Positions 7,400 to 37,015 of a stretch of 64,000 bases of DNA are shown piece after piece. Positions within the stretch are counted from its first letter, which is position 1. Every line of letters starts with the position of its first letter. A program made the position numbers and the translations under genes. The notes under the pieces were generated by a model. The model did no database searches. It saw only the letters and a list, made by a program, of their open reading frames with translations, and had not been told where the DNA came from. The stretch comes from Heterodontus francisci (taxonomy: Eukaryota). The stretch lies in assembly GCF_036365525.1 (NCBI RefSeq), contig NC_090395.1:65559326-65623325 (forward strand), given 5' to 3'.

Positions 7400-7714
7400 C
7401 GGAAGATATTTGTAGCTCGACAGCAAACATTGGATCGAAGCCAGATTGTTCAATACCACAGCTGTACCATCCTGCATCGCCTGAGCGAAGATCCTTCATT
7501 GTAACAACAAATATTCCTTGTGTCTTGTTATCTGTGATTGACATTCTTTCATGTTGCCCATTTGATGTTACTAAAACTGAACACTGGTGATTCCAGCCAT
7601 GACACCAATATTTCACGTTTGACTGGTATTGCTGTGTCTCATAGTGACAATCTATTGTGATCAATCTTCCCACAATTCCTATTACGTTCTTTTTTGCCCA
7701 CAATGCACCTGAAA
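7400..7714 (-). CDS. Gene A exon 2: V-set Ig domain of a CD300/CMRF35/pIgR-like receptor
   Basis: ttgtctcctcag acceptor, G|GTACAT donor, 315 nt, phase 1-1; (V)SGALWA..ITIDCHY..KYWCHGWNHQC..RMSITDNKTQGIFVVTMKDL..DAGWYSCG..VELQIS; four Cys including the KYWC-x6-C pair of the CD300/pIgR family. Confidence 0.92.
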
Positions 7715-7969
7715 CTGAGGAGACAATATTTCAGAAATTGACCAGGAAATAACTGCTTGTTATAAACAGGTACATTTTAGTAAGTGTTACCACTGAGTAC
7801 AGATTCTATCTATTAATATATGGAATTCCTTCTAATTTGTGATGAAAGAAAACATTAGTATAGTGCCTTATCACGGCCTTAAGACGTGACAAAGCACTTC
7901 ACAGCAATGATTTTTTATTGAGCAAGAGTCACTTTTGTTATTGTGTCAGCTGTGAGTCAGTGCATTCTT

Positions 7970-8885: not shown

Positions 8886-9165
8886 TGGGAAGGGAAGATT
8901 CAGGAACTTGTAGATAGACCAATGAGCAGGACCTTGAGAATAATAAACGCAGGATTATTCCCAGTGACACATGGTCTTCTCTATAAGAATAGTAAGATAA
9001 GGGAAGTAATTCTCTGGCTGGAGAGATGGCTCAGAAGAAAAGGCTTTGGATTCCTGCCACATCGGGGTCAATTCTGGATGAACAAAGGAACAAAGAACAA
9101 AGAAAATTACAGCACAGGAACAGGCCCTTCGGCCCTCCAAGCCTGCGCCGATCCAGATCCTCTAT

Positions 9166-13070: not shown

Positions 13071-13248
13071 TTTTAATCTTAAGCTTAACTTAGTTAAATG
13101 AAAAAGGAATGAAAAGTTTTTTACCAATCACGATAAAACCAGAGAAATAGAAAAAGCCTTACCTTATATGCACACCAACGAGTCCTTTTTTTTGGTTAGA
13201 GGAGGAGGGCGGGTGGGAGACACTACAAGTGTGGTGTATCGGGTTCAG

Positions 13249-16200
13249 AAACCGCCCAAATATATAGTGTTTTACTTACCCAGCAGCCCCCTGGCCTCCG
13301 CCGAAAACAAAAGGAAATTAAGTTTACTTTCAAACTGACCATCCCAGCTGCTCACTCGCTCGCACTCTCTGCTCCCGAAAAAGCTGCTGCAATGAAAGGA
13401 AAGTTATTTTAAACCGCCCAAATATATAGTGTTTTACTTACCCAGCAGCCCCCTGGCCTCCGCCGAAAACAAAAGGAAATTAAGTTTACTTTCAAACTGA
13501 CCTTCCCAGCTGCTCACTCGCTCGCACTCTCTGCTCCCGAAAAAGCTGCTGCAATGAAAGGAAAGTTATTTTAAACCGCCCAAATATATAGTGTTTTACT
13601 TACCCAGCAGCCCCCTGGCCTCCGCCAAAGACAAAAGGAAATTAAGTTTACTTTCAAACTGACCTTCCCAGCTGCTCACTCGCTCGCACTCTCTGCTCCC
13701 GAAAAAGCTGCTGCAATGAAAGGAAAGTTATTTTAAACCGCCCAAATATATAGTGTTTTACTTACCCAGCAGCCCCCTGGCCTCCGCCGAAAACAAAAGG
13801 AAATTAAGTTTACTTTCAAACTGACCTTCCCAGCTGCTCACTCGCTTGCACTCTCTGCTCCCGAAAAAGCTGCTGCAATGAAAGGAAAGTTATTTTAAAC
13901 CGCCCAAATATATAGTGTTTTACTTACCCAGCAGTCCCCTGGCCTCCGCCGAAAACAAAAGGAAATTAAGTTTACTTTCAAACTGACCTTCCCAGCTGCT
14001 CACTCGCTCGCACTTTTTGCTCCCGAAAAAGCTGCTGCAATGAAAGGAAAGTTATTTTAAACCGCCCAAATATATAGTGTTTTACTTACCCAGCAGCCCC
14101 CTGGCCTCCGCCGAAAACAAAAGGAAATTAAGTTTACTTTCAAACTGACCTTCCCAGCTGCTCACTCGCTCGCACTCTCTGCTCCCGGAAAAGCTGCTGC
14201 AATGAAAGGAAAGTTATTTTAAACCGCCCAAATATATAGTGTTTTACTTACACAGCAGCCCCCTGGCCTCCGCCGAAAACAAAAGGAAATTAAGTTTACT
14301 TTCAAACTGACCTTCCCAGCTGCTCACTCGCTCGCACTCTCTGCTCCCGAAAAAGCTGCTGCAATGAAAGGAAAGTTATTTTAAACTGCCCAAATATATG
14401 GTGTTTTACTTACCCAGCAGTCCCCTGGCCTCCGCCGAAAACAAAAGGAAATTAAGTTTACTTTCAAACTGACCTTCCCAGCTGCTCACTCGCTCGCACT
14501 CTCTGCTCCCGAAAAAGCTGCTGCAATGAAAGGAAAGTTATTTTAAACCACCCAAATATATAGTGTTTTACTTACCCAGCAGCCCCCTGGCCTCCGCCGA
14601 AAACAAAAGGAAATTAAGTTTACTTTCAAACTGACCATCCCAGATGCTCACACGCTCGCACTCTCCTGCTCCCGAAAAAGCTGCTGCAATGAAAGGAAAG
14701 TTATTTTAAACTGCCCAAATATATAGTGTTTTACTTACCCAGCAGCCCCCTGGCCTCCGCCGAAAACAAAAGGATATGAAGTTTACTTTCAAACTGACCT
14801 TCCCAGCTGCTCACTCGCTTGCACTCTCTTGCTCCCGAAAAAGCTGCTGCAATGAAAGGAAAGTTATTTTAAACCGCCCAAATATATAGTGTTTTACTTA
14901 CCCAGCAGCCCCCTGGCCTCCGCTGAAAACAAAAGGAAATTAAGTTTACTTTCAAACTGACCTTCCCAGCTGCTCACTCGCTCGCACACTCTGCTCCCGA
15001 AAAAGCTGCTGCAATGAAAGGAAAGTTATTTTAAACCGCCCAAAAATATAGTGTTTTACTTACCCAGCAGCCCCCTGGCCTCCACCAAAAACAAAAGGAA
15101 ATTAAGTTTACTTTCAAACTGACCTTCCCAGCGGCTCACTCGCTCGCACTCTCTGCTCCCGAAAATGCTGCTGCAATGAAAGGAAAGTTATTTTAAACCA
15201 CCCAAATATATAGTGTTTTACTTCCCCAGCAGCCCCCTGGCCTCCGCCAAAAACAAAAGGAAATTAAGTTTACTTTCAAACTGACCTTCCCAGCTGCTCA
15301 CTCGCTCGCACTCTCTGCTCCCGAAAAAGCTGCTGCAATGATAGGAAAGTTATTTTAAACCGCCCAAATATATAGTGTTTTACTTACCCAGCAGCCCCCT
15401 GGCCTCTGCCGAAAACAAAAGGAAATTAAGTTTACTTTCAAACTGACCTTCCCAGCTGCTCACTCGCTCGCACTCTCTGCTCTCGAAAAAGCTGCTGCAA
15501 TGAAAGGAAAGTTATTTTAAACCGCCCAAATACATAGTGTTTTACTTACCCAGCAGCCCCCTGGGCTCCGCCGAAAACAAAAGGAAATTATTTTACTTTC
15601 AAACTGACCTTCCCAGCTGCTCACTCGCTCGCACTCTCTGCTCCCGAAAAAGCTGCTGCAATGAAAGGAAAGTTATTTTAAACCGCCCAAATATATAGTG
15701 TTTTACTTACCCAGCAGTCCCCTGGCCTCTGCCGAAAACAAAAGGAAATTAAGTTTACTTTCAAACTGACCTTCCCAGCTGCTCACTCGCTTGCACTCTC
15801 TGCTCCCGAAAAAGCTGCTGCAATGAAAGGAAAGTTATTTTAAACCGCCCAAATATATAGTGTTTTACTTACCCAGCAGCCCCCTGGCCTCTGCCGAAAA
15901 CAAAAGGAAATTAAGTTTACTTTCAAACTGACCTTCCCAGCTGCTCACTCGCTCGCACTCTCTGCTCCCGAAAAAGCTGCTGCAATGAAAGGAAAGTTAT
16001 TTTAAACCGCCCAAATATATAGTGTTTTACTTACCCAGCAGCCCCCTGGCCTCTGCCGAAAACAAAAGGATATGAAGTTTACTTTCAAACTGACCTTCCC
16101 AGCTAATCACTCGCTTGCACTCTCTTGCTCCCGAAAAAGCTGCTGCAATGAAAGGAAAGTTGTTTTAAACCGCCCAAATATATAGTGTTTCACTTACCCA

Positions 16201-19200
16201 GCAGCCCCCTGGCCTCCGCCGAAAACAAAAGGAAATTAAGTTTACTTTCAAACTGACCTTCCCAGCTGCTCACTTGCTCGCAATCTCTGCTCCCGAAAAA
16301 GCTGCTGCAATGAAAGGAAAGTTATTTTAAACCGCCCAAATATATAGTGTTTTACTTACCCAGCAGCCCCCTGGGCTCCGCCGAAAACAAAAGGAAATTA
16401 AGTTTACTTTCAAACTGACCTTCCCAGCTGCTCACTCGCTCGCACTCTCTGCTCCCGAAAAAGCTGCTGCAATGAAAGGAAAGTTATTTTAAACCGCCCA
16501 AATATATAATGTTTTACTTACCCAGCAGCCCCCTGGCCTCCGCCGAAAACAAAAGGAAATTAAGTTTACTTTCAAACTGACCTTCCCAGCTGCTCACTCG
16601 CTCGCACTCTCTGCTCCCGAAAAAGCTGCTGCAATGAAAGGAAAGTTATTTTAAACCACCCAAATATATAGTGTTTTACTTACCCAGCAGCCCCCTGGCC
16701 TCTGCCGAAAACAAAAGGAAATTAAGTTTACTTTCAAACTGACCTTCCCAGCTGCTCACTCGCTCGCACTCTCTGCTCTCGAAAAAGCTGCTGCAATGAA
16801 AGGAAAGTTATTTTAAACCGCCCAAATACATAGTGTTTTACTTACCCAGCAGCCCCCTGGGCTCCGCCGAAAACAAAAGGAAATTATTTTACTTTCAAAC
16901 TGACCTTCCCAGCTGCTCACTCGCTCGCACTCTCTGCTCCCGAAAAAGCTGCTGCAATGAAAGGAAAGTTATTTTAAACCGCCCAAATATATAGTGTTTT
17001 ACTTACCCAGCAGCCCCCTGGCCTCTGCCGAAAACAAAAGGATATGAAGTTTACTTTCAAACTGACCTTCCCAGCTAATCACTCGCTTGCACTCTCTTGC
17101 TCCCGAAAAAGCTGCTGCAATGAAAGGAAAGTTATTTTAAACCGCCCAAATATATAGTGTTTTACTTACCCAGCAGCCCCCTGGCCTCCGCCGAAAACAA
17201 AAGGAAATTAAGTTTACTTTCAAACTGACCTTCCCAGCTGCTCACTCGCTCGCACTCTCTGCTCCCGAAAAAGCTGCTGCAATGAAAGGAAAGTTATTTT
17301 AAACCGCCCAAATATATAGTGTTTTACTTACCCAGCAGTCCCCTGGCCTCCGCCGAAAACAAAAGGAAATTAAGTTTACTTTCAAACTGACCATCCCAGC
17401 TGCTCACTCGCTCGCACACTCTGCTCCCGAAAAAGCTGCTGCAATGAAAGGAAAGTTATTTTAAACCGCCCAAATATATAATGTTTTACTTACCCAGCAG
17501 CCCCCTGGCCTCCGCCGAAAACAAAAGGAAATTAAGTTTACTTTCAAACTGACCTTCCCAGCTGCTCACTCGCTCGCACTCTCTGCTCCCGAAAAAGCTG
17601 CTGCAATGAAAGGAAAGTTATTTTAAACTGCCCAAATATATAGTGTTTTACTTACCCAGCAGCCCCCTGGCCTCCGCTGAAAACAAAAGGAAATTAAGTT
17701 TACTTTCAGACTGACCTTCCCAGCTGCTCACTCGCTCGCACTCTCTGCTCTCGAAAAAGCTGCTGCAATGAAAGGAAAGTTATTTTAAACCGCCCAAATA
17801 CATAGTGTTTTACTTACCCAGCAGCCCCCTGGGCTCCGCCGAAAACAAAAGGAAATTATTTTACTTTCAAACTGACCTTCCCAGCTGCTCACTCGCTCGC
17901 ACTCTCTGCTCCCGAAAAAGCTGCTGCAATGAAAGGAAAGTTATTTTAAACCGCCCAAATATATAGTGTTTTACTTACCCAGCAGTCCCCTGGCCTCCGC
18001 CGAAAACAAAAGGAAATTAAGTTTACTTTCAAACTGACCTTCCCAGCTGCTCACTCGCTTGCACTCTCTGCTCCCTAAAAAGCTGCTGCAATGAAAGGAA
18101 AGTTATTTTAAACCGCCCAAATATATAGTGTTTTACTTACCCAGCAGCCCCCTGGCCTCCGCCGAAAACAAAAGGAAATTAAGTTTACTTTCAAACTGAC
18201 CTTCCCAGCTGCTCACTCGCTCGCACTCTCTGCTCCCGAAAAAGCTGCTGCAATGAAAGGAAAGTTATTTTAAACCGCCCAAATATATAGTATTTTACTT
18301 ACCCAGCAGCCCCCTGGCCTCTGCCGAAAACAAAAGGATATGAAGTTTACTTTCAAACTGACCTTCCCAGCTAATCACTCGCTTGCACTCTCTTGCTCCC
18401 GAAAAAGCTGCTGCAATGAAAGGAAAGTTATTTAAACCGCCCAAATATATAGTGTTTTACTTACCCAGCAGCCCCCTGGCCTCCGCCGAAAACAAAAGGA
18501 AATTAAGTTTACTTTCAAACTGACCTTCCCAGCTGGTCACTCGCTCGCACTCTCTGCTCCCGAAAAAGCTGCTGCAATGAAAGGAAAGTTATTTTAAACC
18601 GCCCAAATATATAGTGTTTTACTTACCCAGCAGTCCCCTGGCCTCCGCCGAAAACAAAAGGAAATTAAGTTTACTTTCAAACTGACCATCCCAGCTGCTC
18701 ACTCGCTCGCACTCTCTGCTCCCGAAAAAGCTGCTGCAATGAAAGGAAAGTTATTTTAAACCGCCCAAATATATAATGTTTTACTTACCCAGCAGCCCCC
18801 TGGCCTCCGCCGAAAACAAAAGGAAATTAAGTTTACTTTCAAACTGACCTTCCCAGCTGCTCACTCGCTCGCACTCTCTGCTCCCGAAAAAGCTGCTGCA
18901 ATGAAAGGAAAGTTATTTTAAACCGCCCAAATATATAGTGTTTTACTTACCCAGCAGCCCCCTGGCCTCTGCCGAAAACAAAAGGAAATTAAGTTTACTT
19001 TCAAACTGACCTTCCCAGCTGCTCACTCGCTCGCACTCTCTGCTCCCGAAAAAGCTGCTGCAATGAAAGGAAAGTTATTTTAAACCGCCCAAATATATAG
19101 TGTTTTACTTACCCAGCAGCCCCCTGGCCTCTGCCGCAAACAAAAGGAAATTAAGTTTACTTTCAAACTGACCTTCCCACCTGCTCACTCGCTCGCACTC

Positions 19201-22200
19201 TCTGCTCCCGAAAAAGCTGCTGCAATGAAAGGAAAGTTATTTTAAACTGCCCAAATATATAGTGTTTTACTTACCCAGCAGCCCCCTGGCCTCCGCTGAA
19301 AACAAAAGGAAATTAAGTTTACTTTCAGACTGACCTTCCCAGCTGCTCACTCGCTCGCACTCTCTGCTCCCGAAAAAGCTGCTGCAATGAAAGGAAAGTT
19401 ATTTTAAACCGCCCAAATATATAGTGTTTTACTTACCCAGCAGCCCCCTGGCCTCCACCGAAAACAAAAGGAAATTATGTTTACTTTCAAACTGACCTTC
19501 CCAGCTGCTCACTCGCTCGCACTCTCTGCTCCCGAAAAAGCTGCTGCAATGAAAGGAAAGTTATTTTAAACTGCCCAGATATATAGTGTTTTACTTACCC
19601 AGCAGCCCCCTGGCCTCCGCCAAAAACAAAAGGAAATTAAGTTTAGTTTCAAACTGACCTTCCCAGCTGCTCACTCGCTCGCACTCTCTGCTCCCGAACA
19701 AGCTGCTGCAATGAAAGGAAAGTTATTTTAAACCGCCCAAATATATAGTGTTTTACTTACCCAGCAGCCCCCTGGCCTCCGCCGAAAACAAAAGGAAATT
19801 AAGTTTACTTTCAAACTGACCTTCCCAGCTGCTCACTCGCTCGCACTCTCTGCTCCCGAAAAAGCTGCTGCAATGAAAGGAAAGTTATTTTAAACCGCCC
19901 AAATGTATAGTGTTTTACTTATCCAGCAGCCCCCTGGCCTTCACTGAAAACAAAAGGAAATTAAGTTTACTATCAAACTGACCTTCCCAGCTGCTCACTC
20001 GCTCGCACGCTCTGCTCCCGAAAAAGCTGCTGCAATGACAGGAAAGTTATTTTAAACCGCCCAAATATATAGTGTTTTACTTACCCAGCAGCCCCCTGGC
20101 CTCTGCCGAAATAAAAAGGAAATTAATTTTACTTTCAAACTGAACTTCCCAGCTGCTCACTCGCTCGCACTCTCTGCTCCCAAAAAAGCTGCTGCAATGA
20201 AAGGAAAGTTTTTTTAAACCACCCAAATATATAGTGTTTTACTTACCCAGCAGCCCCCTGGCCTCCGCCGAAAACAAAAGGAAATTATGTTTACTTTCAA
20301 ACTGACCTTCCCAGCTGCTCACTCGCTCGCACTCTCTGCTCCCGAAAAAGCTGCTGCAATGAAAGGAAAGTTATTTTAAACCGCCCAAATATATAGTGTT
20401 TTACTTACCCAGCAGCCCCCTGGCCTCCGCCGCAAACAAAAGGAAATTAAGTTTACTTTCAAACTGACCTTCCCAGCAGCTCACTCGCTCGCACTCTCTG
20501 CTCCCGAAAAAGCTGCTGCAATGAAAGGAAAGTTATTTTAAACCGCCCAAATATATAGTGTTTTACTTACCCAGCAGCCCCCTGGCCTCCACTGAAAACA
20601 AAAGGAAATTAAGTTTACTTTCAGACTGACCTTCCCAGCTGCTCACTCGCTCGCACTCTCTGCTCCCGAAAAAGCTGCTGCAATGAAAGGAAAGTTATTT
20701 TAAACCGCCCAAATATATAGTGTTTTACTTACCCAGCAGCCCCCTGGCCTCCGCCGAAAACAAAAGGAAATTAAGTTTACTTTCAAACTGACCTTCCCAG
20801 CTGCTCACTCGCTCGCACTCTCTGCTCCCGAAAAAGCTGCTGCAATGAAAGGAAAGTTATTTTAAACTGCCCAGATATATAGTGTTTTACTTACCCAGCA
20901 GCCCCCTGGCCTCCGCCGAAAACAAAAGGAAATTAAGTTTACTTTCAAACTGACCTTCCCAGCTGCTCACTCGCTCGCACTCTCTGCTCCCGAAAAAGCT
21001 GCTGCAATGAAAGGAAAGTTATTTTAAACCGCCCAAATATATAGTGTTTTACTTACCCAGCAGCCCCCTGGCCTCTGCCGAAAACAAAAGGATATGAAGT
21101 TTACTTTCAAACTGACCTTCCCAGCTAATCACTCGCTTGCACTCTCTTGCTCCCGAAAAAGCTGCTGCAATGAAAGGAAAGTTATTTTAAACCGCCCAAA
21201 TATATAGTGTTTTACTTACCCAGCAGTCCCCTGGCCTCCGCCGAAAACAAAAGGAAAATAAGTTTACTTTCAAACTGACCATCCCAGCTGCTCACTCGCT
21301 CGCACTCTCTGCTCCCGAAAAAGCTGCTGCAATGAAAGGAAAGTTATTTTAAACCGCCCAAATATATAATGTTTTACTGACCCATCAGCCCCCTGGCCTC
21401 CGCCGAAAACAAAAGGAAATTAAGTTTACTTTCAAACTGACCTTCCCAGCTGCTCACTCGCTCGCACTCTCTGCTCCCGAAAAAGCTGCTGCAATGAAAG
21501 GAAAGTTATTTTAAACCGCCCAAATATATAGTGTTTTACTTACCCAGCAGCCCCCTGGCCTCTGCCGAAAACAAAAGGAAATTAAGTTTACTTTCAAACT
21601 GACCTTCCCAGCTGCTCACTCGCTCGCACTCTCTGCTCCCGAAAAAGCTGCTGCAATGAAAGGAAAGTTATTTTAAACCGCCCAAATATATAGTGTTTTA
21701 CTTACCCAGCAGCCCCCTGGCCTCCGCCGCAAACAAAAGGAAATTAAGTTTACTTTCAAACTGACCTTCCCAGCTGCTCACTCGCTCGCACTCTCTGCTC
21801 CCGAAAAAGCTGCTGCAATGAAAGGAAAGTTATTTTAAACTGCCCAAATATATAGTGTTTTACTTACCCAGCAGCCCCCTGGCCTCCGCTGAAAACAAAA
21901 GGAAATTAAGTTTACTTTCAGACTGACCTTCCCAGCTGCTCACTCGCTCGCACTCTCTGCTCCCGAAAAAGCTGCTGCAATGAAAGGAAAGTTATTTTAA
22001 ACCGCCCAAATATATAGTGTTTTACTTACCCAGCAGCCCCCTGGCCTCCGCCGAAAACAAAAGGAAATTATGTTTACTTTCAAACTGACCTTCCCAGCTG
22101 CTCACTCGCTCGCACTCTCTGCTCCCGAAAAAGCTGCTGCAATGAAAGGAAAGTTATTTTAAACTGCCCAGATATATAGTGTTTTACTTACCCAGCAGCC

Positions 22201-25200: not shown

Positions 25201-28200
25201 TCCCGAAAAAGCTGCTGCAATGAAAGGAAAGTTATTTTAAACCGCCCAAATATATAGTGTTTTACTTACCCAGCAGCCCCCTGGCCTCCGCCGAAAACAA
25301 AAGGAAACTAAGTTTACTTTCAAACTGACCTTCCCAGCTGCTCAGTCACTCGCACTCTCTGCTCCCGAAAAAGCTGCTGCAATGAAAGGAAAGTTATTTT
25401 AAACTGCCCAAATATATAGTGCTTTACTTTCCCAGCAGCCCCCTGGCCTCCGCCGAAAACAAAAGGAAATTAAGTTTCCTTTCAAACTGACCTTCCCAGC
25501 TGCTCACTCGCTCGCACTCTCTGCTCCCGAAAAAGCTGCTGCAATGAAAGGAAAGTTATTTTAAACCGCCCAAATATATAGTGTTTTACTTACCCAGCAG
25601 CCCCCTGGCCTCCGCCGAAAACAAAAGGAAATTAAGTTTACTTTCAAACTGACCTTCCCAGCTGCTCACTCGCTCGCACTCTCTGCTCCCGAAAAAGCTG
25701 CTGCAATGAAAGGAAAGTTATTTTAAACTGCCCAGATATATAGTGTTTTACTTACCCAGCAGCCCCCTGGCCTCCGCCGAAAACAAAAGGAAATTAAGTT
25801 TACTTTCAAACTGACCTTCCCAGCTGCTCACTCGCTCGCACTCTCTGCTCCCGAAAAAGCTGCTGCAATGAAAGGAAAGTTATTTTAAACTGCCCAAATA
25901 TATAGTGTTTTACTTACCCAGCAGCCCCCTGGCCTCTGCCAAAAACAAAAGGAAATTAAGTTTACTTTCAAACTGACCTTCCCAGCTGCTCACTCGCTCG
26001 CACTCTCTGCTCCCGAAAAAGCAACTGCAATGAAAGGAAAGTTATTTTAAACCGCCCAAATATATAGTGTTTTACTTACCCAGCAGCCCCCTGGCCTTCA
26101 CTGAAAACAAATGGAAATTAAGTTTACTATCAAACTGACCTTCCCAGCTGCTCACTCGCTCGCACGCTCTGCTCCCGAAAAAGCTGCTGCAATGAAAGGA
26201 AAGTTATTTTAAACCGCCCAAATATATAGTGTTTTACTTACCCAGCAGCCCCCTGGCCTCCGCCGAAAACAAAAGGAAATTAAGTTTACTTTCAAACTGA
26301 CCTTCCCAGCTGCTCACTCGCTCACACTCTCTGCTCCCGAAAAAGCTGCTGCAATGAAAGGAAAGTTATTTTAAACTGCCCAAATATATCGTGTTTTACT
26401 TAGCCAGCAGCCCCCTGGCCTCTGCCAAAAACAAAAGGAAATTAAGTTTACTTTCAAACTGACCTTCCCAGCTGCTCACTCGCTCGCACTCTCTGCTCCC
26501 GAACAAGCTGCTGCAATGAAAGGAAAGTTATTTTAAACCGCCCAAATATAGAGTGTTTTACTTACCCAGCAGCCCCCTGGCCTCCGCCGAAAACAAAAGG
26601 AAATTAAGTTTACTTTCAAACTGACCTTCCCAGCTGCTCAGTCGCTCGCACTCTCTGCTCCCGAAAAAGCTGCTGCAATGAAAGGAAAGTTATTTTAAAC
26701 TGCCCAAATATATAGTGCTTTACTTTCCCAGCAGCCCCCTGGCCTCCGCCGAAAACAAAAGGAAATTAAGTTTCCTTTCAAACTGACCTTCCCAGCTGCT
26801 CACTCGCTCGCACTCTCTGCTCCCGAAAAAGCTGCTGCAATGAAAGGAAAGTTATTTTAAACCACCCAAATATATAGTGTTTTACTTACCCAGCAGCCCC
26901 CTGGCCTCCGCCGAAAACAAAAGGAAATTAAGTTTACTTTCAAACTGACCTTCCCAGCTGCTCACTCGCTCGCACTCTCTGCTCCCGAAAAAGCTGCTGC
27001 AATGAAAGGAAAGTTATTTTAAACTGCCCAGATATATAGTGTTTTACTTACCCAGCAGCCCCCTGGCCTCCGCCGAAAACAAAAGGAAATTAAGTTTACT
27101 TTCAAACTGACCTTCCCAGCTGCTCACTCGCTCGCACTCTCTGCTCCCGAAAAAGCTGCTGCAATGAAAGGAAAGTTATTTTAAACTGCCCAAATATATA
27201 GTGTTTTACTTACCCAGCAGCCCCCTGGCCTCTGCCAAAAACAAAAGGAAATTAAGTTTACTTTCAAACTGACCTTCCCAGCTGCTCACTCGCTCGCACT
27301 CTCTGCTCCCGAAAAAGCAACTGCAATGAAAGGAAAGTTATTTTAAACCGCCCAAATATATAGTGTTTTACTTACCCAGCAGCCCCCTGGCCTTCACTGA
27401 AAACAAATGGAAATTAAGTTTACTATCAAACTGACCTTCCCAGCTGCTCACTCGCTCGCACGCTCTGCTCCCGAAAAAGCTGCTGCAATGAAAGGAAAGT
27501 TATTTTAAACCGCCCAAATATATAGTGTTTTACTTACCCAGCAGCCCCCTGGCCTCCGCCGAAAACAAAAGGAAATTAAGTTTACTTTCAAACTGACCTT
27601 CCCAGCTGCTCACTCGCTCACACTCTCTGCTCCCGAAAAAGCTGCTGCAATGAAAGGAAAGTTATTTTAAACTGCCCAAATATATCGTGTTTTACTTAGC
27701 CAGCAGCCCCCTGGCCTCTGCCAAAAACAAAAGGAAATTAAGTTTACTTTCAAACTGACCTTCCCAGCTGCTCACTCGCTCGCACTCTCTGCTCCCGAAC
27801 AAGCTGCTGCAATGAAAGGAAAGTTATTTTAAACCGCCCAAATATAGAGTGTTTTACTTACCCAGCAGCCCCCTGGCCTCCGCCAAAAACAAAAGGAAAT
27901 TAAGTTTACTTTCAAACTGACCTTCCCAGCTGCTCACTCGCTCGCACTCTCTGCTCCCGAAAAAGCTGCTGCAATGAAAGGAAAGTTATTTTAAACCGCC
28001 CAAATATATAGTGTTATACTTACCCAGCAGCCCCCTGGCCTCCACCGAAAACAAAAGGAAATTAAGTTTACTTTCAAACTGACCTTCCCAGCTGCTCACT
28101 CGCTCGCACTCTCTGCTCCCGAAAAAGCTGCTGCAATGAAAGGAAAGTTATTTTAAACCGCCCAAATATATCATGTTTTACTTACCCAGCAGCCCCCTGG

Positions 28201-31200
28201 CCTCTGCCGAAAACAAAAGGAAATTAAGTTTACTTTCAAACTGACCTTCCCAGCTGCTCACTCGCTCGCACTCACTGCTCCCGAAAAAGCTGCTGCAATG
28301 AAAGGAAAGTTATTTTAAACCGCCCAAATATATAGTGTTTTACTTACCCAGCAGCCCCCTGGCCTCCGCCGAAAACAAAAGGAAACTAAGTTTACTTTCA
28401 AACTGACCTTCCCAGCTGCTCAGTCGCTCGCACTCTCTGCTCCCGAAAAAGCTGCTGCAATGAAAGGAAAGTTATTTTAAACCGCCCAAGTATATAGTGC
28501 TTTACTTACCCAGCAGCCCCCTGGCCTCTGCCGAAAACAAAAGGAAATTAAGTTTCCTTTCAAACTGACCTTCCCAGCTGCTCACTCGCTCGCACTCTCT
28601 GCTCCCGAAAAAGCTGCTGCAGTGAAAGGAAAGTTATTTTAAACCGCCCAAATATATAGTGTTTTACTTACCCAGCAGCCCCCTGGCCTCCGCCAAAAAC
28701 AAAAGGAAATTAAGTTTACTTTCAAACTGACCTTCCCAGCTGCTCACTCGCTCGCACTCTCTGCTCCCGAAAATGCTGCTGCAATGAAAGGAAAGTTATT
28801 TTAAACCGCCCAAATATATAGTGTTTTACTTACCCAGCAGCCCCCTGGCCACCACCAAAAACAAAAGGAAATTAAGTTTACTTTCAAACTGACCTTCCCA
28901 GCTGCTCACTCGCTCGCACTCTCTGCTCCCGAAAAAGCTGCTGCAATGAAAGGAAAGTTATTTTAAACTGCCCAAATATATCGTGTTTTACTTACCCAGC
29001 AGCCCCCTGGCCTCTGCCAAAAACAAAAGGAAATTAAGTTTACTTTCAAACTGACCTTCCCAGCTGCTCACTCGCTCGCACTCTCTGCTCCCGAACAAGC
29101 TGCTGCAATGAAAGGAAAGTTATTTTAAACTGCCCAAATATAGAGTGTTTTACTTACCCAGCAGCCCCCTGGCCTCCGCCGAAAACAAAAGGAAATTAAG
29201 TTTACTTTCAAACTGACCTTCCCAGCTGCTCACTCGCTCGCACTCTCTGCTCCCGAAAAAGCTGCTGCAATGAAAGGAAAGTTATTTTAAACCGCCCAAA
29301 TATATAGTGTTATACTTACCCAGCAGCCCCCTGGCCTCCACCGAAAACAAAAGGAAATTAAGTTTACTTTCAAACTGACCTTCCCAGCTGCTCACTCGCT
29401 CGCACTCTCTGCTCCCGAAAAAGCTGCTGCAATGAAAGGAAAGTTATTTTAAACCGCCCAAATATATCATGTTTTACTTACCCAGCAGCCCCCTGGCCTC
29501 TGCCGAAAACAAAAGGAAATTAAGTTTACTTTCAAACTGACCTTCCCAGCTGCTCACTCGCTCGCACTCACTGCTCCCGAAAAAGCTGCTGCAATGAAAG
29601 GAAAGTTATTTTAAACCGCCCAAATATATAGTGTTTTACTTACCCAGCAGCCCCCTGGCCTCCGCCGAAAACAAAAGGAAACTAAGTTTACTTTCAAACT
29701 GACCTTCCCAGCTGCTCAGTCGCTCGCACTCTCTGCTCCCGAAAAAGCTGCTGCAATGAAAGGAAAGTTATTTTAAACCGCCCAAGTATATAGTGCTTTA
29801 CTTACCCAGCAGCCCCCTGGCCTCCGCCGAAAACAAAAGGAAATTAAGTTTCCTTTCAAACTGACCTTCCCAGCTGCTCACTCGCTCGCACTCTCTGCTC
29901 CCGAAAAAGCTGCTGCAGTGAAAGGAAAGTTATTTTAAACCACCCAAATATATAGTGTTTTACTTACCCAGCAGCCCCCTGGCCTCCGCCGAAAACAAAA
30001 GGAAATTAAGTTTACTTTCAAACTGACCTTCCCAGCTGCTCACTCGCTCGCACTCTCTGCTCCCGAAAATGCTGCTGCAATGAAAGGAAAGTTATTTTAA
30101 ACCGCCCAAATATATAGTGTTTTACTTACCCAGCAGCCCCCTGGCCACCACCAAAAACAAAAGGAAATTAAGTTTACTTTCAAACTGACCTTCCCAGCTG
30201 CTCACTCGCTCGCACTCTCTGCTCCCGAAAAAGCTGCTGCAATGAAAGGAAAGTTATTTTAAACCGCCCAAATATATCGTGTTTTACTTACCCAGCAGCC
30301 CCCTGGCCTCTGCCGAAAACAAAAGGAAATTAAGTTTACTTTCAAACTGACCTTCCCAGCTGCTCACTCGCTCGCACTCTCTGCTCCCGAAAAAGCTGCT
30401 GCAATGAAAGGAAAGTTATTTTAAACCGCCCAAATATATAGTGTTTTACTTACCCAGCAGCCCCCTGGCCTCCGCCGAAAACAAAAGGAAACTAAGTTTA
30501 CTTTCAAACTGACCTTCCCAGCTGCTCAGTCACTCGCACTCTCTGCTCCCGAAAAAGCTGCTGCAATGAAAGGAAAGTTATTTTAAACTGCCCAAATATA
30601 TAGTGTTTTACTTAACCAGCAGCCCCCTGGCCTCCGCCGAAAACAAATGGAAATTAAGTTTACTTTCAAACTGACCTTCCCAGCTGCTCACTCGCTCGCA
30701 CTCTCTGCTCCCGAAAAAGCTGCTGCAATGAAAGGAAAGTTATTTTAAACCGCCCAAATATATAGTGTTTTACTTACCCAGCAGCCCCCTGGCCTCCGCC
30801 GAAAACAAAAGGAAATTAAGTTTACTTTCAAACTGACCTTCCCAGCTGCTCACTCGCTCGCACTCTCTGCTCCCGAAAAAGCTGCTGCAAGGAAAGGAAA
30901 GTTATTTTAAACCACCCAGATATATAGTGTTTTACTTACCCAGCAGCCCCCGGGCCTCCGCTGAAAACAAAAGGAAATTAAGTTTCCTTTCAAACTGACC
31001 TTCCCAGCTGCTCACTCGCTCGCACTCTCTGCTCCCGAAAAAGCTGCTGCAATGAAAGGAAAGTTATTTTAAACCGCCCAAATATATAGTGTTTTACTTA
31101 CCCAGCAGCCCCCTGGCCTCTGCCTAAAACAAAAGGAAATTAAGTTTATTTTCAAACTGACCTTCCCAGCCGCTCACTCGCTCGCACTCTCTTCTCCCGA

Positions 31201-34200
31201 AAAATCTGCTGCAATGAAAGGAAAGTTATTTTAAACCGCCCAAATATATAGTGTTTTACTTACCCAGCAGCCCCCTGGCCTCCACCGAAAACAAAAGGAA
31301 ATTAAGTTTACTTTCAAACTGACCTTCCCAGCTGCTCACTCGCTCGCACTCTCTGCTCCCGAAAAAGCTGCTGCAATGAAAGGAAAGTTATTTTAAACCG
31401 CCCAAATATATAGTGTTTTACTTACCCAGCAGCCCCCTGGCCTCCGCCGAAAACAAAAGGAAACTAAGTTTACTTTCAAACTGACCTTCCCAGCTGCTCA
31501 GTCGCTCGCACTCTCTGCTCCCGAAAAAGCTGCTGCAATGAAAGGAAAGTTATTTTAAACTGCCCAAATATATAGTGCTTTACTTACCCAGCAGCCCCCT
31601 GGCCTCCGCCGAAAACAAAAGGAAATTAAGTTTCCTTTCAAACTGACCTTCCCAGCTGCTCACTCGCTCGCACTCTCTGCTCCCGAAAAAGCTGCTGCAA
31701 TGAAAGGAAAGTTATTTTAAACCGCCCAAATATATAGTGTTTTACTTAACCAGCAGCCCCCTGGCCTCCGCCGAAAACAAAAGGAAATTAAGTTTACTTT
31801 CAAACTGACCTTCCCAGCTGCTCACTCGCTCGCACTCTCTGCTCCCGAAAAAGCTGCTGCAATGAAAGGAAAGTTATTTTAAACCGCCCAAATATATAGT
31901 GTTTTACTTACCCAGCAGCCCCCTGGCCTCCGCCGAAAACAAAAGGAAATTAAGTTTACTTTCAAACTGACCTTCCCAGCTGCTCACTCGCTCGCACTCT
32001 CTGCTCCCGAAAAAGCTGCTGCAATGAAAGGAAAGTTATTTTAAACCACCCAGATATATAGTGTTTTACTTACCCAGCAGCCCCCTGGCCTCCGCCGAAA
32101 ACAAAAGGAAATTAAGTTTCCTTTCAAACTGACCTTCCCAGCTGCTCACTCGCTCGCACTCTCTGCTCCCGAAAAAGCTGCTGCAATGAAAGGAAAGTTA
32201 TTTTAAACCGCCCAAATATATAGTGTTTTACTTACCCAGCAGCCCCCTGGCCTCTGCCTAAAACAAAAGGAAATTAAGTTTACTTTCAAACTGACCTTCC
32301 CAGCCGCTCACTCGCTCGCACTCTCTTCTCCCGAAAAAGCTGCTGCAATGAAAGGAAAGTTATTTTAAACCGCCCAAATATATAGTGTTTTACTTACCCA
32401 GCAGCCCCCTGGCCTCCACCGAAAACAAAAGGAAATTAAGTTTACTTTCAAACTGACCTTCCCAGCTGCTCACTCGCTCGCACTCTCTGCTCCCGAAAAA
32501 GCTGCTGCAATGAAAGGAAAGTTATTTTAAACCGCCCAAATATATAGTGTTTTACTTACCCAGCAGCCCCCTGGCCTCCGCCGAAAACAAAAGGAAACTA
32601 AGTTTACTTTCAAACTGACCTTCCCAGCTGCTCAGTCGCTCGCACTCTCTGCTCCCGAAAAAGCTGCTGCAATGAAAGGAAAGTTATTTTAAACCGCCCA
32701 AGTATATAGTGCTTTACTTACCCAGCAGCCCCCTGGCCTCCGCCGAAAACAAAAGGAAATTAAGTTTCCTTTCAAACTGACCTTCCCAGCTGCTCACTCG
32801 CTCGCACTCTCTGCTCCCGAAAAAGCTGCTGCAATGAAAGGAAAGTTATTTTAAACCGCCCAAATATATAGTGTTTTACTTACCCAGCAGCCCCCTGGCC
32901 TCCGCCGAAAACAAAAGGAAATTAAGTTTACTTTCCAACTGACCTTCCCAGCTGCTCACTCGCTCGCACTCTCTGCTCCCGAAAAAGCTGCTGCAATGAA
33001 AGGAAAGTTATTTTAAACCGCCCAAATATATAGTGTTTTACTTACCCAGCAGCCCACCGGCCTCCACCGAAAACAAAAGGAAATTAAGTTTACTTTCAAA
33101 CTGACCTTCCCAGCTGCTCACTCGCTCGCACTCTCTGCTCCCGAAAAAGCTGCTGCAATGAAAGGAAAGTTATTTTAAACCGCCCAAATATATCATGTTT
33201 TACTTACCCAGCAGCCCCCTGGCCTCTGCCGAAAACAAAAGGAAATTAAGTTTACTTTCAAACTGACCTTCCCAGCTGCTCAGTCGCTCGCACTCTCTGC
33301 TCCCGAAAAAGCTGCTGCAATGAAAGGAAAGTTATTTTAAACCGCCCAAGTATATAGTGCTTTACTTACCCAGCAGCCCCCTGGCCTCCGCCGAAAACAA
33401 AAGGAAATTAAGTTTCCTTTCAAACTGACCTTCCCAGCTGCTCACTCGCTCGCACTCTCTGCTCCCGAAAAAGCTGCTGCAGTGAAAGGAAAGTTATTTT
33501 AAACCGCCCAAATATATAGTGTTTTACTTACCCAGCAGCCCCCTGGCCTCCGCCGAAAACAAAAGGAAATTAAGTTTACTTTCAAACTGACCTTCCCAGC
33601 TGCTCACTCGCTCGCACTCTCTGCTCCCGAAAATGCTGCTGCAATGAAAGGAAAGTTATTTTAAACCGCCCAAATATATAGTGTTTTACTTACCCAGCAG
33701 CCCCCTGGCCACCACCAAAAACAAAAGGAAATTAAGTTTACTTTCAAACTGACCTTCCCAGCTGCTCACTCGCTCGCACTCTCTGCTCCCGAAAAAGCTG
33801 CTGCAATGAAAGGAAAGTTATTTTAAACCGCCCAAATATATCGTGTTTTACTTACCCAGCAGCCCCCTGGCCTCTGCCGAAAACAAAAGGAAATTAAGTT
33901 TACTTTCAAACTGACCTTCCCAGCTGCTTACTCGCTCGCACTCTCTGCTCCCGAAAAAGCTGCTGCAATGAAAGGAAAGTTATTTTAAACCGCCCAAATA
34001 TATAGTGTTTTACTTACCCAGCAGCCCCCGGCCTCCGCCGAAAACAAAAGGAAACTAAGTTTACTTTCAAACTGACCTTCCCAGCTGCTCAGTCACTCGC
34101 ACTCTCTGCTCCCGAAAAAGCTGCTGCAATGAAAGGAAAGTTATTTTAAACTGCCCAAATATATAGTGCTTTACTTACCCAGCAGCCCACTGGCCTCCGC

Positions 34201-35916
34201 CGAAAACAAAAGGAAATTAAGTTTCCTTTCAAACTGACCTTCCCAGCTGCTCACTCGCTCGCACTCTCTGCTCCCGAAAAAGCTGCTGCAATGAAAGGAA
34301 AGTTATTTTAAACCGCCCAAATATATAGTGTTTTACTTAACCAGCAGCCCCCTGGCCTCCGCCGAAAACAAAAGGAAATTAAGTTTACTTTCAAACTGAC
34401 CTTCCCAGCTGCTCACTCGCTCGCACTCTCTGCTCCCGAAAAAGCTGCTGCAATGAAAGGAAAGTTATTTTAAACCGCCCAAATATATAGTGTTTTACTT
34501 ACCCAGCAGCCCCCTGGCCTCCGCCGAAAACAAAAGGAAATTAAGTTTACTTTCAAACTGACCTTCCCAGCTGCTCACTCGCTCGCACTCTCTGCTCCCG
34601 AAAAAGCTGCTGCAATGAAAGGAAAGTTATTTTAAACCACCCAGATATATAGTGTTTTACTTACCCAGCAGCCCCCTGGCCTCCGCCGAAAACAAAAGGA
34701 AATTAAGTTTCCTTTCAAACTGACCTTCCCAGCTGCTCACTCGCTCGCACTCTCTGCTCCCGAAAAAGCTGCTGCAATGAAAGGAAAGTTATTTTAAACC
34801 GCCCAAATATATAGTGTTTTACTTACCCAGCAGCCCCCTGGCCTCTGCCTAAAACAAAAGGAAATTAAGTTTATTTTCAAACTGACCTTCCCAGCCGCTC
34901 ACTCGCTCGCACTCTCTTCTCCCGAAAAAGCTGCTGCAATGAAAGGAAAGTTATTTTAAACCGCCCAAATATATAGTGTTTTACTTACCCAGCAGCCCCC
35001 TGGCCTCCACCGAAAACAAAAGGAAATTAAGTTTACTTTCAAACTGACCTTCCCAGCTGCTCACTCGCTCGCACTCTCTGCTCCCGAAAAAGCTGCTGCA
35101 ATGAAAGGAAAGTTATTTTAAACCGCCCAAATATATAGTGTTTTACTTACCCAGCAGCCCCCTGGCCTCCGCCGAAAGCAAAAGGAAACTAAGTTTACTT
35201 TCAAACTGACCTTCCCAGCTGCTCAGTCGCTCGCACTCTCTGCTCCCGAAAAAGCTGCTGCAATGAAAGGAAAGTTATTTTAAACCGCCCAAGTATATAG
35301 TGCTTTACTTACCCAGCAGCCCCCTGGCCTCCGCCGAAAACAAAAGGAAATTAAGTTTCCTTTCAAACTGACCTTCCCAGCTGCTCACTCGCTTGCACTC
35401 TCTGCTCCCGAAAAAGCTGCTGCAATGAAAGGAAAGTTATTTTAAACCGCCCAAATATATAGTGTTTTACTTACCCAGCAGCCCCCTGGCCTCCGCCGAA
35501 AACAAAAGGAAATTAAGTTTACTTTCCAACTGACCTTCCCAGCTGTTCACTCGCTCGCACTCTCTGCTCCCGAAAAAGCTGCTGCAATGAAAGGAAAGTT
35601 ATTTTAAACCGCCCAAATATATAGTGTTTTACTTACCCAGCAGCCCACCGGCCTCCGCCGAAAACAAAAGGAAATTAAGTTTACTTTCAAACTGACCTTC
35701 CCAGCTGCTCACTCGCTCGCACTCTCTGCTCCCGAAACAGCTGCTGCAATGAAAGGAAAGTTATTTTAAACCGCCCAAATATATAGTGTTTTACTTACCC
35801 AGCAGCCCCCTGGCCTCCGCCGAAAACAAAAGGAAATTAAGTTTCCTTTCAAACTGACCTTCCCAGCTGCTCACTCGCTCGCACTCCCTGCTCCCGAAAA
35901 AGCTGCTGCAATGAAA
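13249..35916. repeat. Tandem array of ~140 copies of a 162-bp monomer forming the 5' end of the CR1
   Basis: Unit starts at 13249, 13411, 13573 ... 35768 (22519/162 = 139.0), last unit partial; + consensus AAACCGCCCAAATATATAGTGTTTTACTTACCCAGCAGCCCCCTGGCCTCCGCCGAAAACAAAAGGAAATTAAGTTTACTTTCAAACTGACCTTCCCAGCTGCTCACTCGCTCGCACTCTCTGCTCCCGAAAAAGCTGCTGCAATGAAAGGAAAGTTATTTT; few substitutions per unit. Confidence 0.98.
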
Positions 35917-36978: not shown

Positions 36979-37015
36979 CGGGTAGGGAACAAATGAGAAG
37001 AATCGGAATCCACAT
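36979..37015 (-). CDS. Gene A exon 1: signal peptide MWIPILLICSLP
   Basis: ATG TGG ATT CCG ATT CTT CTC ATT TGT TCC CTA CCC G|GTGAGT; the phase-1 donor joins the 7714 acceptor to give MWIPILLICSLPVSGALWA. Confidence 0.85.

What the first reader, a model, noticed from the sequence alone, without database searches (positions are those of the whole stretch)
13249..35916. Each monomer is a compact splice-signal cassette in the sense direction of both the LINE and the host gene
Seen on the minus strand: AAAATAAC-TTTCCTTTCATT-GCAG|CAG (branch-like TAAC, pyrimidine tract, NAGNAG acceptor), a 47-nt purine-rich segment, AAG|GTCAGT donor, a second tract CTTAATTTCCTTTTGTTTTCGG one base short of an acceptor, and TGG|GTAAGT consensus donor. 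This predicts a repeating 47-nt exon/115-nt intron, or 107-nt exons, and ~280 donor-like sites. Inference: the module could let the LINE splice upstream transcription onto its ORF1, collapse the array by splicing, recruit U1 to block premature polyadenylation, yield back-spliced circles, or trap splicing of the host gene.
Basis: partly seen in the sequence, partly recalled or inferred. Interest (0 to 1): 0.85.

Follow-up and report, generated by a model that had tools for sequence, protein, structure and literature searches.

The report
Shark LINE promoter repeats that splice

Summary
Window 13249-35916 is 139.9 copies of a 162-bp unit (96% alike). On the minus strand each copy carries the quoted acceptor (A1, TTTCCTTTCATTGCAG|CAG), a 47-nt purine-rich segment, donor D1 (AAG|GTCAGT) and donor D2 (TGG|GTAAGT). 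All three sites are intact in 120 of 139 monomers.

The array abuts the 178-nt unique leader of an intact CR1 LINE, and both lie in sense in the 29.3-kb first intron of a CD300/pIgR-like receptor gene.

The predicted junction GGGAAG^CAGCTT (115 nt removed, GT..AG) occurs in contigs of three public runs from two organisms. One run also shows the 3-nt-shifted NAGNAG form. The window's own DNA has no such joined sequence. So D1-to-A1 splicing is very probably real, although the runs are only guessed to be RNA.

I saw no junction for D2, the 107-nt exon, monomer-to-ORF1 or host leader-to-monomer. Circles cannot be told apart from linear splicing in a tandem array.

The monomer is best read as the LINE's promoter unit. 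It has a TATA box and a GC box, and the array's first base lies 31 nt after the TATA. The array then grew in place, in 8- and 16-monomer blocks.

Verdict: a new variant of known kinds (rodent-L1-type monomers, human-L1 5'UTR splicing). The scan noted this same stretch before (s1-872516, s1-872529).

The parts
13249..35916 (-). Array of 139.9 x 162-bp monomers. Shows higher-order periodicity at 8 and 16 monomers.
   Evidence: TRF; monomer alignment and variant map; lag analysis.
35903..35916 (-). 5' end of the array and element. The first base is monomer position 14 (TTTCATTGCAG...), 31 nt downstream of the first T of the monomer's TATATAT. This is the inferred transcription start.
   Evidence: Chance of falling in a 6-nt TATA+28..33 window is about 6/162.
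13260..13266 (-). TATA box (TATATAT, monomer positions 145-151) in the last monomer. The GC box GGGCGG follows at 13252-13257.
   Evidence: TATATA is present in 117 of 139 monomers and GGGCGG in 106 of 139.
13387..13400 (-). Acceptor A1 of the last monomer: the pyrimidine tract plus GCAG. The exon starts at 13386, or at 13383 for the alternative NAGNAG acceptor.
   Evidence: PWM 9.85 bits; used in junction contigs.
13340..13386 (-). 47-nt purine-rich 'exon' of the last monomer (monomer positions 25-71).
   Evidence: 66% purine. No ATG in the consensus; this last copy carries a variant ATG at 13342-13340.
13493..13504 (-). Donor D1 (AAG|GTCAGT) of the penultimate monomer. The exon ends at 13502 and the intron starts at 13501. 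This is the donor of the observed joints.
   Evidence: joints 13502->13386 (skips 115) and 13502->13383 (skips 118), GT..AG on the minus strand; PWM 8.49 bits.
13274..13282 (-). Donor D2 (TGG|GTAAGT) of the last monomer. The GT is at 13279-13278.
   Evidence: PWM 8.77 bits. No junction seen among the rows shown.
13071..13248 (-). Unique 178-nt leader ('tether') between the array and the ORF1 ATG. It holds the strong donor D3 (AAG|GTAAGG; GT at 13162-13161), has no ATG and shows no similarity to the monomer.
12123..13070 (-). LINE ORF1, 315 aa from the ATG, with an SGNH/GDSL esterase domain. The stop TAA overlaps the ORF2 ATG by one base (TAATG).
9166..12123 (-). LINE ORF2, 985 aa and open, with an AP endonuclease and a reverse transcriptase domain.
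9082..9165 (-). LINE 3' UTR ending in short TTCTTTG-type repeats (CR1-style tail). The end point is approximate.
36979..37015 (-). Host gene leader exon (MWIPILLICSLP, phase 1) with donor CCG|GTGAGT.
7400..7708 (-). Host gene V-set exon (CD300/pIgR-like). It reads in frame with the leader exon, so intron 1 (7709-36978) holds the LINE and the array in sense.

Best explanation
The 162-bp unit is the promoter and 5'UTR monomer of a young CR1-clade LINE, analogous to the monomers of mouse and rat L1.

Promoter. Each unit has a TATA box and a GC box that should start transcription about 31 nt downstream, at position 14 of the next unit.

Splicing. A transcript starting in any unit other than the last runs through further units. 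There the spliceosome pairs donor D1 (AAG|GTCAGT) with acceptor A1 (GCAG|CAG, or the CAG 3 nt later) of the next unit. This removes 115 nt, which includes that unit's TATA and GC box, and leaves a 47-nt purine-rich, ATG-free piece.

Amplification. This copy inserted in sense into intron 1 of a CD300/pIgR-like gene. Its monomer block was then amplified at the DNA level to 140 units, in blocks of 8 and 16 monomers. Its CpG sites have been decaying as methylated DNA does.

Status of each step:
- Shown: the anatomy, the motif integrity, the junction sequences in public runs and the higher-order repeat pattern.
- Inferred: promoter activity, that the junctions come from RNA, and that the expansion happened after insertion.

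I lean to the view that the splicing is a tolerated by-product. It may be mildly useful through a promoter-proximal 5' splice site, but I do not see it as a purpose-built device. Spliced RNAs would give promoter-less daughter copies, as human SpIREs do.
For: - LINE identity: ORF1 has a GDSL esterase domain (PF13472, 9.4e-14). ORF2 has Exo_endo_phos and RVT_1 (1.7e-35). Both ORFs are open.
- Position: the array ends exactly at the 178-nt leader, 5' of the ORF1 ATG, on the same strand.
- Start site: the array's first base is monomer position 14, 31 nt after the first T of TATATAT.
- Junctions: 13502->13386 (skips 115, GT..AG) in X1 (depth 49.6), X2 (123.8, 2 contigs) and X5 (96.3). 13502->13383 (skips 118) in X5 (251.7).
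- A third joined form, GGGAAG^AGGCC, in X1 fits the same donor D1 and the acceptor created by the G113A variant.
- None of the joined sequences exists in the window's DNA, and every monomer is 161-163 bp.
- RNA status: relative depths of X1 and X2, which are one sample, differ by region from 0.26x to 18x. That is not expected of DNA from one individual.
- Scores: the monomer sites match the host gene's real sites, and the combination occurs in 0.14% of shuffles.
- Amplification: monomers are more alike at lags of 8 and 16 units, and variant blocks repeat.
- Methylation: CpG columns vary 6.4 times more than other columns.
- Precedents: human L1 intra-5'UTR splicing and SpIREs (PMC5860796); rodent L1 monomers plus tether (PMC5381506).
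Against: - The runs are labelled 'RNA?' by guess only. No run on record as RNA holds the stretch.
- Only contigs were laid, so strand, transcript ends and expression level are unknown.
- Junction contigs are short, with 28-29 letters on the shorter side.
- Promoter activity is inferred from motifs and one 5' end. Within this array the TATA region is the most variable non-CpG part, at 4.6 differences per column against 1.7 on average.
- 140 monomers is far beyond any functional LINE 5'UTR.
- The third joined form has a very high depth in X1 (3333). It might be a 120-bp DNA monomer variant rather than a splice product.
Confidence: 0.6

Rival explanations
1. Purpose-built splice cassette. The monomer was selected for its splice signals. 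These would give every transcript the same short ATG-free leader whichever monomer fires, load U1 and exon-junction complexes to aid elongation and export, splice upstream host transcription onto ORF1, or act as a sink for splicing factors.
For: - Two donors and one acceptor of real-site strength in 162 nt occur in 0.14% of shuffles.
- D1-to-A1 is actually used, in two organisms.
- Splice-site columns carry fewer variants than average: A1 0.53 and D1 0.78 differences per non-CpG column, against 1.73 overall.
- The 47-nt piece is purine-rich and ATG-free.
- Chicken LL2R, a donor-rich tandem repeat transcribed from a CR1 promoter, recruits snRNPs and SR proteins (bioRxiv 10.64898/2026.03.19.712899).
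Against: - D1-to-A1 splicing deletes the TATA and GC box of each unit, so spliced RNA would yield promoter-less progeny, as shown for human L1 SpIREs (PMC5860796).
- No acceptor of any strength lies between the last monomer and the ATG. The best tether candidate scores 2.0 bits, and the next strong acceptor (12978) is inside ORF1, so its use would remove the start codon.
- The LINE has almost no AATAAA/ATTAAA hexamers to suppress.
- The variant counts are not independent because variants spread by block duplication. Absence of ATG is not significant (P about 0.05).
- No D2 junction was seen.
Confidence: 0.2
2. No splicing at all. The joined forms are DNA variants of the repeat (47-bp and 120-bp units) present elsewhere in these genomes, and runs X1, X2 and X5 are DNA.
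For: - The runs' RNA status is only a guess.
- The GGGAAG^AGGCC form has a depth (3333 in X1) comparable to the monomers themselves.
- Other LINE structural variants, such as the 121-nt skip at 12155->12277 with non-canonical ends, are also seen in X1 and X2.
Against: - Three different joined forms all share one donor and all fit GT..AG, with only 2 nt of microhomology. A random deletion fits GT..AG in roughly 1 of 85 cases once the 2-nt slide is allowed.
- The 3-nt-shifted form is the classic NAGNAG pattern.
- The longer direct repeat GCAGCT, which slippage or template switching would favour, is not the breakpoint.
- None of the 139 monomers here has such a deletion.
- Even if the forms are in DNA, exact intron loss points to retro-copied spliced RNA.
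Confidence: 0.08
3. Independent satellite. The 162-bp array was already in the intron and the LINE landed at its edge, so the monomers have nothing to do with the LINE.
For: - Only one copy is visible in the window, and no other monomer copy lies elsewhere in the 64 kb.
- 22.7 kb is satellite-sized.
- Organism G has the LINE body and the tether but no monomer at 90% likeness or more.
Against: - The array has the same orientation as the LINE and stops exactly at the tether.
- The array's outer end falls at TATA+31, as expected of a transcript-derived 5' end.
- Monomers and the LINE 5' part co-occur in organisms A and B.
Confidence: 0.05
4. Captured host promoter. The monomer derives from the promoter, non-coding first exon and start of intron 1 of a host gene. 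The LINE picked it up and then tandemly duplicated it. The donors would be that gene's real 5' splice sites, and A1 would have arisen at or near the duplication joint.
For: - The order TATA, start site, 58- or 118-nt exon, then a consensus donor is exactly that of a pol II gene's 5' end.
- LINE 5'UTRs are known to be replaced by unrelated sequence (PMC5381506).
- Organism G has the tether without this monomer.
Against: - No source gene could be searched for, because no vertebrate genome collection is on hand.
- Nothing similar lies elsewhere in the window.
- This reading concerns origin and is compatible with the best explanation.
Confidence: 0.07

Closest known systems
Mouse and rat L1 5'UTR monomers (A, TF, GF types) with tether
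   Same: - Head-to-tail promoter units directly 5' of ORF1, joined to it by a short unique tether.
- Transcription starts inside a unit.
- CpG-bearing, and subject to methylation (PMC5381506).
   Different: - The host element is a CR1-clade LINE with an esterase ORF1, in a shark.
- The unit is TATA-driven.
- Each unit carries a used donor/acceptor pair.
- There are 140 units instead of a handful.
Human L1 intra-5'UTR splicing and SpIREs (Larson et al. 2018, PMC5860796)
   Same: - Canonical donor and acceptor inside a LINE 5'UTR are used.
- Splicing removes promoter elements.
   Different: - Here the sites are repeated in every monomer, so splicing is iterative, monomer to monomer, and leaves 47-nt units.
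- Genomic SpIRE-like copies were not looked for, because no tool allowed it.
Chicken LL2R tandem repeat (Krasikova et al., bioRxiv 10.64898/2026.03.19.712899)
   Same: - A long tandem array next to a CR1.
- An excess of predicted donors over acceptors on one strand.
- Few polyadenylation signals.
   Different: - LL2R is about 160 kb and is transcribed by read-through from a CR1 promoter.
- It is reported as unable to complete splicing, and it nucleates snRNP-rich loops in oocytes.
- Here the repeat is the LINE's own 5' monomer and at least one intron is removed. No cytology is available.
Satellites and macrosatellites born from internal tandem repeats of transposable elements (review PMC6947457)
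   Same: - DNA-level amplification of a TE-internal repeat, with higher-order periodicity.
   Different: - The parental full-length, open-ORF LINE is still attached.
- The array lies inside a gene's intron in sense.

Membership tests
CR1-clade LINE | ORF2 with an AP endonuclease and a reverse transcriptase domain | tested here: met
   PF03372 6.7e-16 and PF00078 1.7e-35 in an open 985-aa ORF.
CR1-clade LINE | ORF1 with an SGNH/GDSL esterase domain; a 3' end of short repeats rather than poly(A) | tested here: met
   PF13472 9.4e-14. The tail is (TTCTTTG)-like. Nearest ORF1 relatives are elasmobranch proteins at 73-75% identity. No phylogeny was made.
LINE 5'UTR promoter monomers (rodent-L1 type) | Tandem units in sense directly 5' of ORF1, joined by a unique tether | tested here: met
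   The array ends at 13249, the tether is 178 nt and the ATG is at 13070.
LINE 5'UTR promoter monomers (rodent-L1 type) | A full-length copy begins at a start site inside a monomer | tested here: met
The first base of the array is 31 nt after the TATA. This rests on one copy only.
LINE 5'UTR promoter monomers (rodent-L1 type) | The monomer has promoter activity | not testable with these tools
   Only motifs are available: TATATAT and GGGCGG.
LINE 5'UTR promoter monomers (rodent-L1 type) | The same monomers head independent copies of the family, in small and variable numbers | not tested
Intra-5'UTR LINE splicing (SpIRE-type) | A canonical GT..AG junction within the 5'UTR, found in transcripts | tested here: inconclusive
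   The junction with GT..AG ends is present in 3 runs of 2 organisms, plus a NAGNAG variant. That the runs are RNA is only a guess.
Intra-5'UTR LINE splicing (SpIRE-type) | Genomic retro-copies carrying the junction | not tested
   The joined sequence is absent from this window. The genome could not be searched.
Donor-rich architectural tandem-repeat RNA (LL2R type) | An excess of donors over acceptors on the transcribed strand and few poly(A) signals | tested here: met
   Each monomer has 2 donors and 1 acceptor. The array has 2 AATAAA/ATTAAA hexamers in 22.7 kb. This is an in-silico result only.
Donor-rich architectural tandem-repeat RNA (LL2R type) | Nascent RNA is retained and recruits snRNPs and SR proteins | not testable with these tools
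   This needs cytology.
TE-derived satellite | DNA-level amplification with higher-order repeat structure | tested here: met
   Mean differences fall at lags 8 and 16 (4.4 and 4.6, against about 5.4). Variant blocks recur.

The most novel reading that the evidence does not exclude
The monomer is a self-contained 'promoter inside an intron' module. Each unit places its TATA and GC box in a 115-nt intron and its leader in a 47-nt exon. Whichever monomer fires, splicing then trims the transcript to the same kind of short, ATG-free, exon-junction-marked leader. Unspliced RNA would remain the template that carries promoters to daughter copies, a division of labour like that of retroviral genomic and spliced RNAs. 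In its 140-unit form inside a receptor gene's first intron, the same module would act as a train of poison exons or as a local sink for U1 and SR proteins.
Probability: 0.18. Interest if true: 0.8.

Novelty: new variant of a known kind. Interest (0 to 1): 0.6.

Why it matters
- Promoter monomers are textbook for rodent L1 but are barely described for CR1, the dominant LINE clade of sharks, reptiles and birds. CR1 5' ends are rarely preserved.
- This copy has an intact element, a clear tether and a 5' end at TATA+31. It therefore offers a defined CR1 promoter to test.
- Monomer-to-monomer splicing would be a new twist on LINE 5'UTR splicing. It sets up a measurable conflict: leader trimming against loss of promoters in progeny.
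- The 22.7-kb sense array places 140 strong acceptors between the leader and V exons of an immune-receptor gene. It is a natural experiment in exon trapping and in how tandem splice sites are handled.
- It also documents a LINE head turning into a satellite while still attached to its parent.

Tried and rejected
- Monomer copies elsewhere in the window: none. Only chance 11-22-nt matches turned up.
- Similarity between the tether and the monomer: not above shuffles (score 26, against 22 +/- 3.6).
- Empty-site comparison with the paralogous gene B: only the V-exon side aligns, so no empty site was found.
- Rfam on 12900-14000: one sub-threshold mir-219 match inside ORF1 and nothing on the monomers.
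- Exact-pattern scans for the monomer in metagenome, bacterial/archaeal genome and viral collections: 0 hits.
- Protein-guided metagenome scan with ORF1: no confirmed relative.
- ORF1 homologue search: the best hits are only 73-75% identical, so no near-identical family member was available for 5'UTR comparison.
- Lack of ATG in the monomer and tether as a sign of selection: rejected as not significant (26% and 21% of shuffles).
- U1 'telescripting' as the main role: judged unlikely because the LINE has one poly(A) hexamer in sense.
- Lower variation at splice-site columns: noted, but not used as evidence of selection, because variants spread by block duplication.
- The loose-end string does not occur in the window.
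- Splice scores come from approximate matrices I wrote from general knowledge. MaxEntScan and SpliceAI were not available.
- The leader-plus-V-exon model and the leader-plus-47-nt models were only translated in local scripts.
- Reads were laid on 9100-13625.

Full report
**What is there.** Tandem Repeats Finder reports one array at 13249-35916: period 162, 139.9 copies, 96% matches, no indels. Read on the minus strand, the array ends at 13249. It is followed by 178 unique bases and then the ATG of an open 315-aa ORF1, which carries a GDSL/SGNH esterase domain. Next comes an open 985-aa ORF2 with AP endonuclease and reverse transcriptase domains, overlapping ORF1 by one base (TAATG). The element ends near 9082 in short TTCTTTG-type repeats. 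This is a complete CR1-clade LINE. Its nearest ORF1 relatives in the protein collection are elasmobranch proteins at 73-75% identity, for example from Pristiophorus japonicus. Earlier notes of this scan call the genome a shark.

**The observation.** I cut the array into 139 monomers of 161-163 bp and aligned them.
- A1: the AG is unchanged in all 139 monomers, and the full 15-mer is exact in 131.
- D1 (AAG|GTCAGT): exact in 132.
- D2 (TGG|GTAAGT): exact in 127.
- All three sites are intact in 120.
- The 47-nt segment between A1 and D1 is 66% purine, against 50% for the other 115 nt.

I scored the sites with approximate vertebrate position matrices written from general knowledge, not MaxEntScan.
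- A1 scores 9.85 bits, D1 8.49 and D2 8.77.
- The host gene's real leader donor scores 10.3 and its V-exon acceptor 9.1.

In 5000 dinucleotide-preserving shuffles of the monomer, a second donor this good occurred in 0.7%, an acceptor this good in 15%, and both together in 0.14%. The combination is unusual, but the acceptor alone is not.

**Host gene.** A leader exon (37015-36979; MWIPILLICSLP, then G|GTGAGT) reads in frame into a V-set exon (7708-7400, acceptor TTTCAG|GT). These joined exon models were only translated in local scripts and were never sent to a search tool.

**Junction evidence.** The run search returned 24 runs with coded names. None is on record as RNA, and X1-X18 are labelled 'RNA?' by guess. 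I laid contigs of X1 and X2 (organism A, one sample), X5 (organism B) and X20 (organism G, DNA-sized) on 9100-13625.
- Joint 13386<->13502 skips 115 nt with ends CT..AC on the plus strand. It appears in X1 (depth 49.6), X2 (123.8, two contigs) and X5 (96.3).
- Checked against the sequence, this is exactly ...GCTGGGAAG | GTCAGT...TTGCAG | CAGCTT... on the minus strand.
- X5 also has 13383<->13502, which skips 118 nt at depth 251.7. This uses the CAG three bases later, a typical NAGNAG alternative.
- A third joined form in X1 (table 5c, depth 3333) reads CTGGGAAGAGGCC. It fits the same donor D1 joined to the acceptor that the G113A variant creates in the 'one base short' tract. That variant is present in 30 of the 139 monomers here and scores 9.5 bits.
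- The third form could instead be a 120-bp DNA variant. As an intron within one monomer it would be only 42 nt, so if it is spliced it must span at least 204 nt.
- None of the joined sequences exists in the window's DNA on either strand.
- X20 has no depth at all on the monomers, although it covers the LINE body and the tether. It is therefore not a control for the junction. It does show that organism G lacks this monomer at 90% likeness or more.

**Why I read the joints as splicing.**
- Three forms share one donor and all fit GT..AG, with only 2 nt of ambiguity.
- The breakpoints avoid the longer direct repeat GCAGCT, which slippage or template switching would favour.
- The 3-nt pair is the signature of tandem acceptors.

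If the runs were DNA, exact intron loss would still point to retro-copied spliced RNA, as in human SpIREs (PMC5860796). One indirect sign that X1 and X2 are RNA comes from their relative depths. They are one sample, yet their relative depths differ by region from about 0.26x to 18x (table 2). DNA from one individual should not do that. The summed contig depths are noisy, though, so I give RNA status about 0.8.

**What was not seen.** The 15 joint rows shown include no D2 junction, no 107-nt exon, no monomer-to-tether or monomer-to-ORF1 junction, and no host-leader junction. One 19-letter loose end abuts A1 in X1. It could be a foreign exon or the flank of another copy, and its letters are not in this window. 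In a tandem array a back-spliced 47-nt circle has the same junction sequence as linear splicing between neighbouring monomers, so contigs cannot address circles.

**What the monomer is.**
- It has TATATAT at positions 145-151 and GGGCGG at 154-159.
- The array's outermost base (35916) is monomer position 14, 31 nt after the first T of the TATA. That is the canonical TATA-to-start distance, with about a 4% chance of arising by accident.
- A full-length LINE copy should begin where its RNA began, so this marks the monomer as a promoter unit. The organisation of tandem monomers plus a tether is known from mouse and rat L1 (PMC5381506).
- The pyrimidine run that serves as A1's tract thus also spans the start site.
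I could not verify that it is the same monomer.
- Neither the monomer nor the tether has an ATG in sense, but shuffles give that result in 26% and 21% of cases.

**How the array grew.** The variant map shows blocks of monomers recurring. Mean differences drop at lags of 8 and 16 monomers: 4.4 and 4.6, against about 5.4. This indicates DNA-level segmental amplification in place, not retrotransposition of a 22.7-kb leader. The 12 CpG columns carry 6.4 times more variants than the others, and the common variants there are the expected C>T and G>A transitions. That pattern fits a methylated, silenced array. Some of these decays create the second acceptor.

1. Collapse of the array by splicing: supported for D1-to-A1.
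2. Splicing upstream transcription onto ORF1: no acceptor of any strength lies in the tether (best candidate 2.0 bits). The next strong acceptor (12978) is inside ORF1, past the ATG. The tether has a very strong donor (AAG|GTAAGG at 13162, 11.3 bits). This function is unsupported.
3. U1 against premature polyadenylation: the LINE's sense strand has one AATAAA/ATTAAA hexamer in 4167 nt and the array has two in 22.7 kb. There is little to protect, although a promoter-proximal 5' splice site could still help transcription.
4. Circles: untestable here.
5. Host trap: plausible on scores. The first A1 (8.2 bits) lies 1.07 kb after the leader donor, and 139 more follow before the true acceptor. Splicing to it would put a stop 11 codons into the first trapped unit. 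This was not observed.

D1-to-A1 splicing removes each unit's TATA and GC box, so spliced RNAs would found promoter-less copies. That argues the splicing is a cost or a by-product for the LINE rather than its design.

**Comparison and novelty.** The parts are each known:
- monomeric LINE promoters in rodent L1;
- intra-5'UTR LINE splicing in human L1 (SpIREs);
- TE heads growing into satellites (PMC6947457);
- a donor-rich tandem repeat beside a CR1 that gathers splicing factors, the chicken LL2R repeat (bioRxiv 10.64898/2026.03.19.712899).

The new element is the combination: a CR1 promoter monomer in a shark in which every unit is a small exon-intron module that appears to be spliced unit to unit, amplified here to 140 units in sense inside a receptor gene's intron. 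My paper searches found no description of spliced LINE monomers. The library is partial, so this is weak evidence of novelty.

**Limits.**
- Only the one read-laying run returned contigs, not reads.
- Scans of public collections for the monomer were empty.
- No vertebrate genome collection was on hand.
- This same stretch was noted earlier in the scan as s1-872516 and s1-872529.

Noticed in passing
window 12121-12135 (-): The ORF1 stop and the ORF2 start overlap by one base (TAATG). They are preceded by GGTTTAAAC, the U_UUA_AAC-type heptamer that other first readers flagged as a possible -1 frameshift site. Here ORF2 has its own ATG, so termination-reinitiation is equally possible.
   Followed up: partly
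window 12155-12277: Contigs of X1 and X2 skip 121 nt near the end of ORF1, with non-canonical ends (GT..TT on the minus strand). This is probably a subfamily deletion variant of the LINE.
   Followed up: no
window 12910-13054: A 543-nt contig of X1 (depth 433) matches ORF1 only up to 13054, 16 nt after the ATG. It continues for 398 nt with sequence unlike this element's start, tether or monomers. This suggests another subfamily with a different head, or an upstream exon joined at ...CTCAG| (table 8).
   Followed up: no
window 13177-13248 against 13328-13625: Organism G (run X20) covers the LINE body and the tether but has zero depth on the monomers. The monomer therefore seems specific to the lineage of organisms A and B, as if the LINE's head had been replaced.
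   Followed up: partly
protein hits P0007, P0028, P0065, P0066, P0081: Relatives of this LINE ORF1 are filed in public databases under several host-gene names:
- an SGNH hydrolase of Pseudomonas aeruginosa (likely contamination by fish DNA);
- isoforms of RPS24 (Pristis pectinata);
- isoforms of TMEM204 and an ABHD14A-like protein (Mobula birostris).
The isoform entries are gene models that splice host exons onto LINE ORF1 pieces.
   Followed up: no
window 632-6105 and 61999-62454: Several older, broken CR1-type fragments of other families lie in the window:
- RT pieces at 632-1864 (-), 4885-6105 (+) and 61999-62454 (-);
- an ORF1-like N-terminus at 3599-4060 (-).
They are 66-70% alike to this element at the DNA level.
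   Followed up: no
window 59118-59709 against 7268-7854: The V exon of the host gene has a paralogue 52 kb upstream on the same strand, 83% alike. The receptor genes are therefore tandem duplicates. This matches note s1-872630 on gene B.
   Followed up: partly
window 53584-54447: A purine/pyrimidine-skewed low-complexity block (GGAGGGG / CCCTCC type repeats, about 850 bp). An N run at 51567-51864 was left untouched.
   Followed up: no
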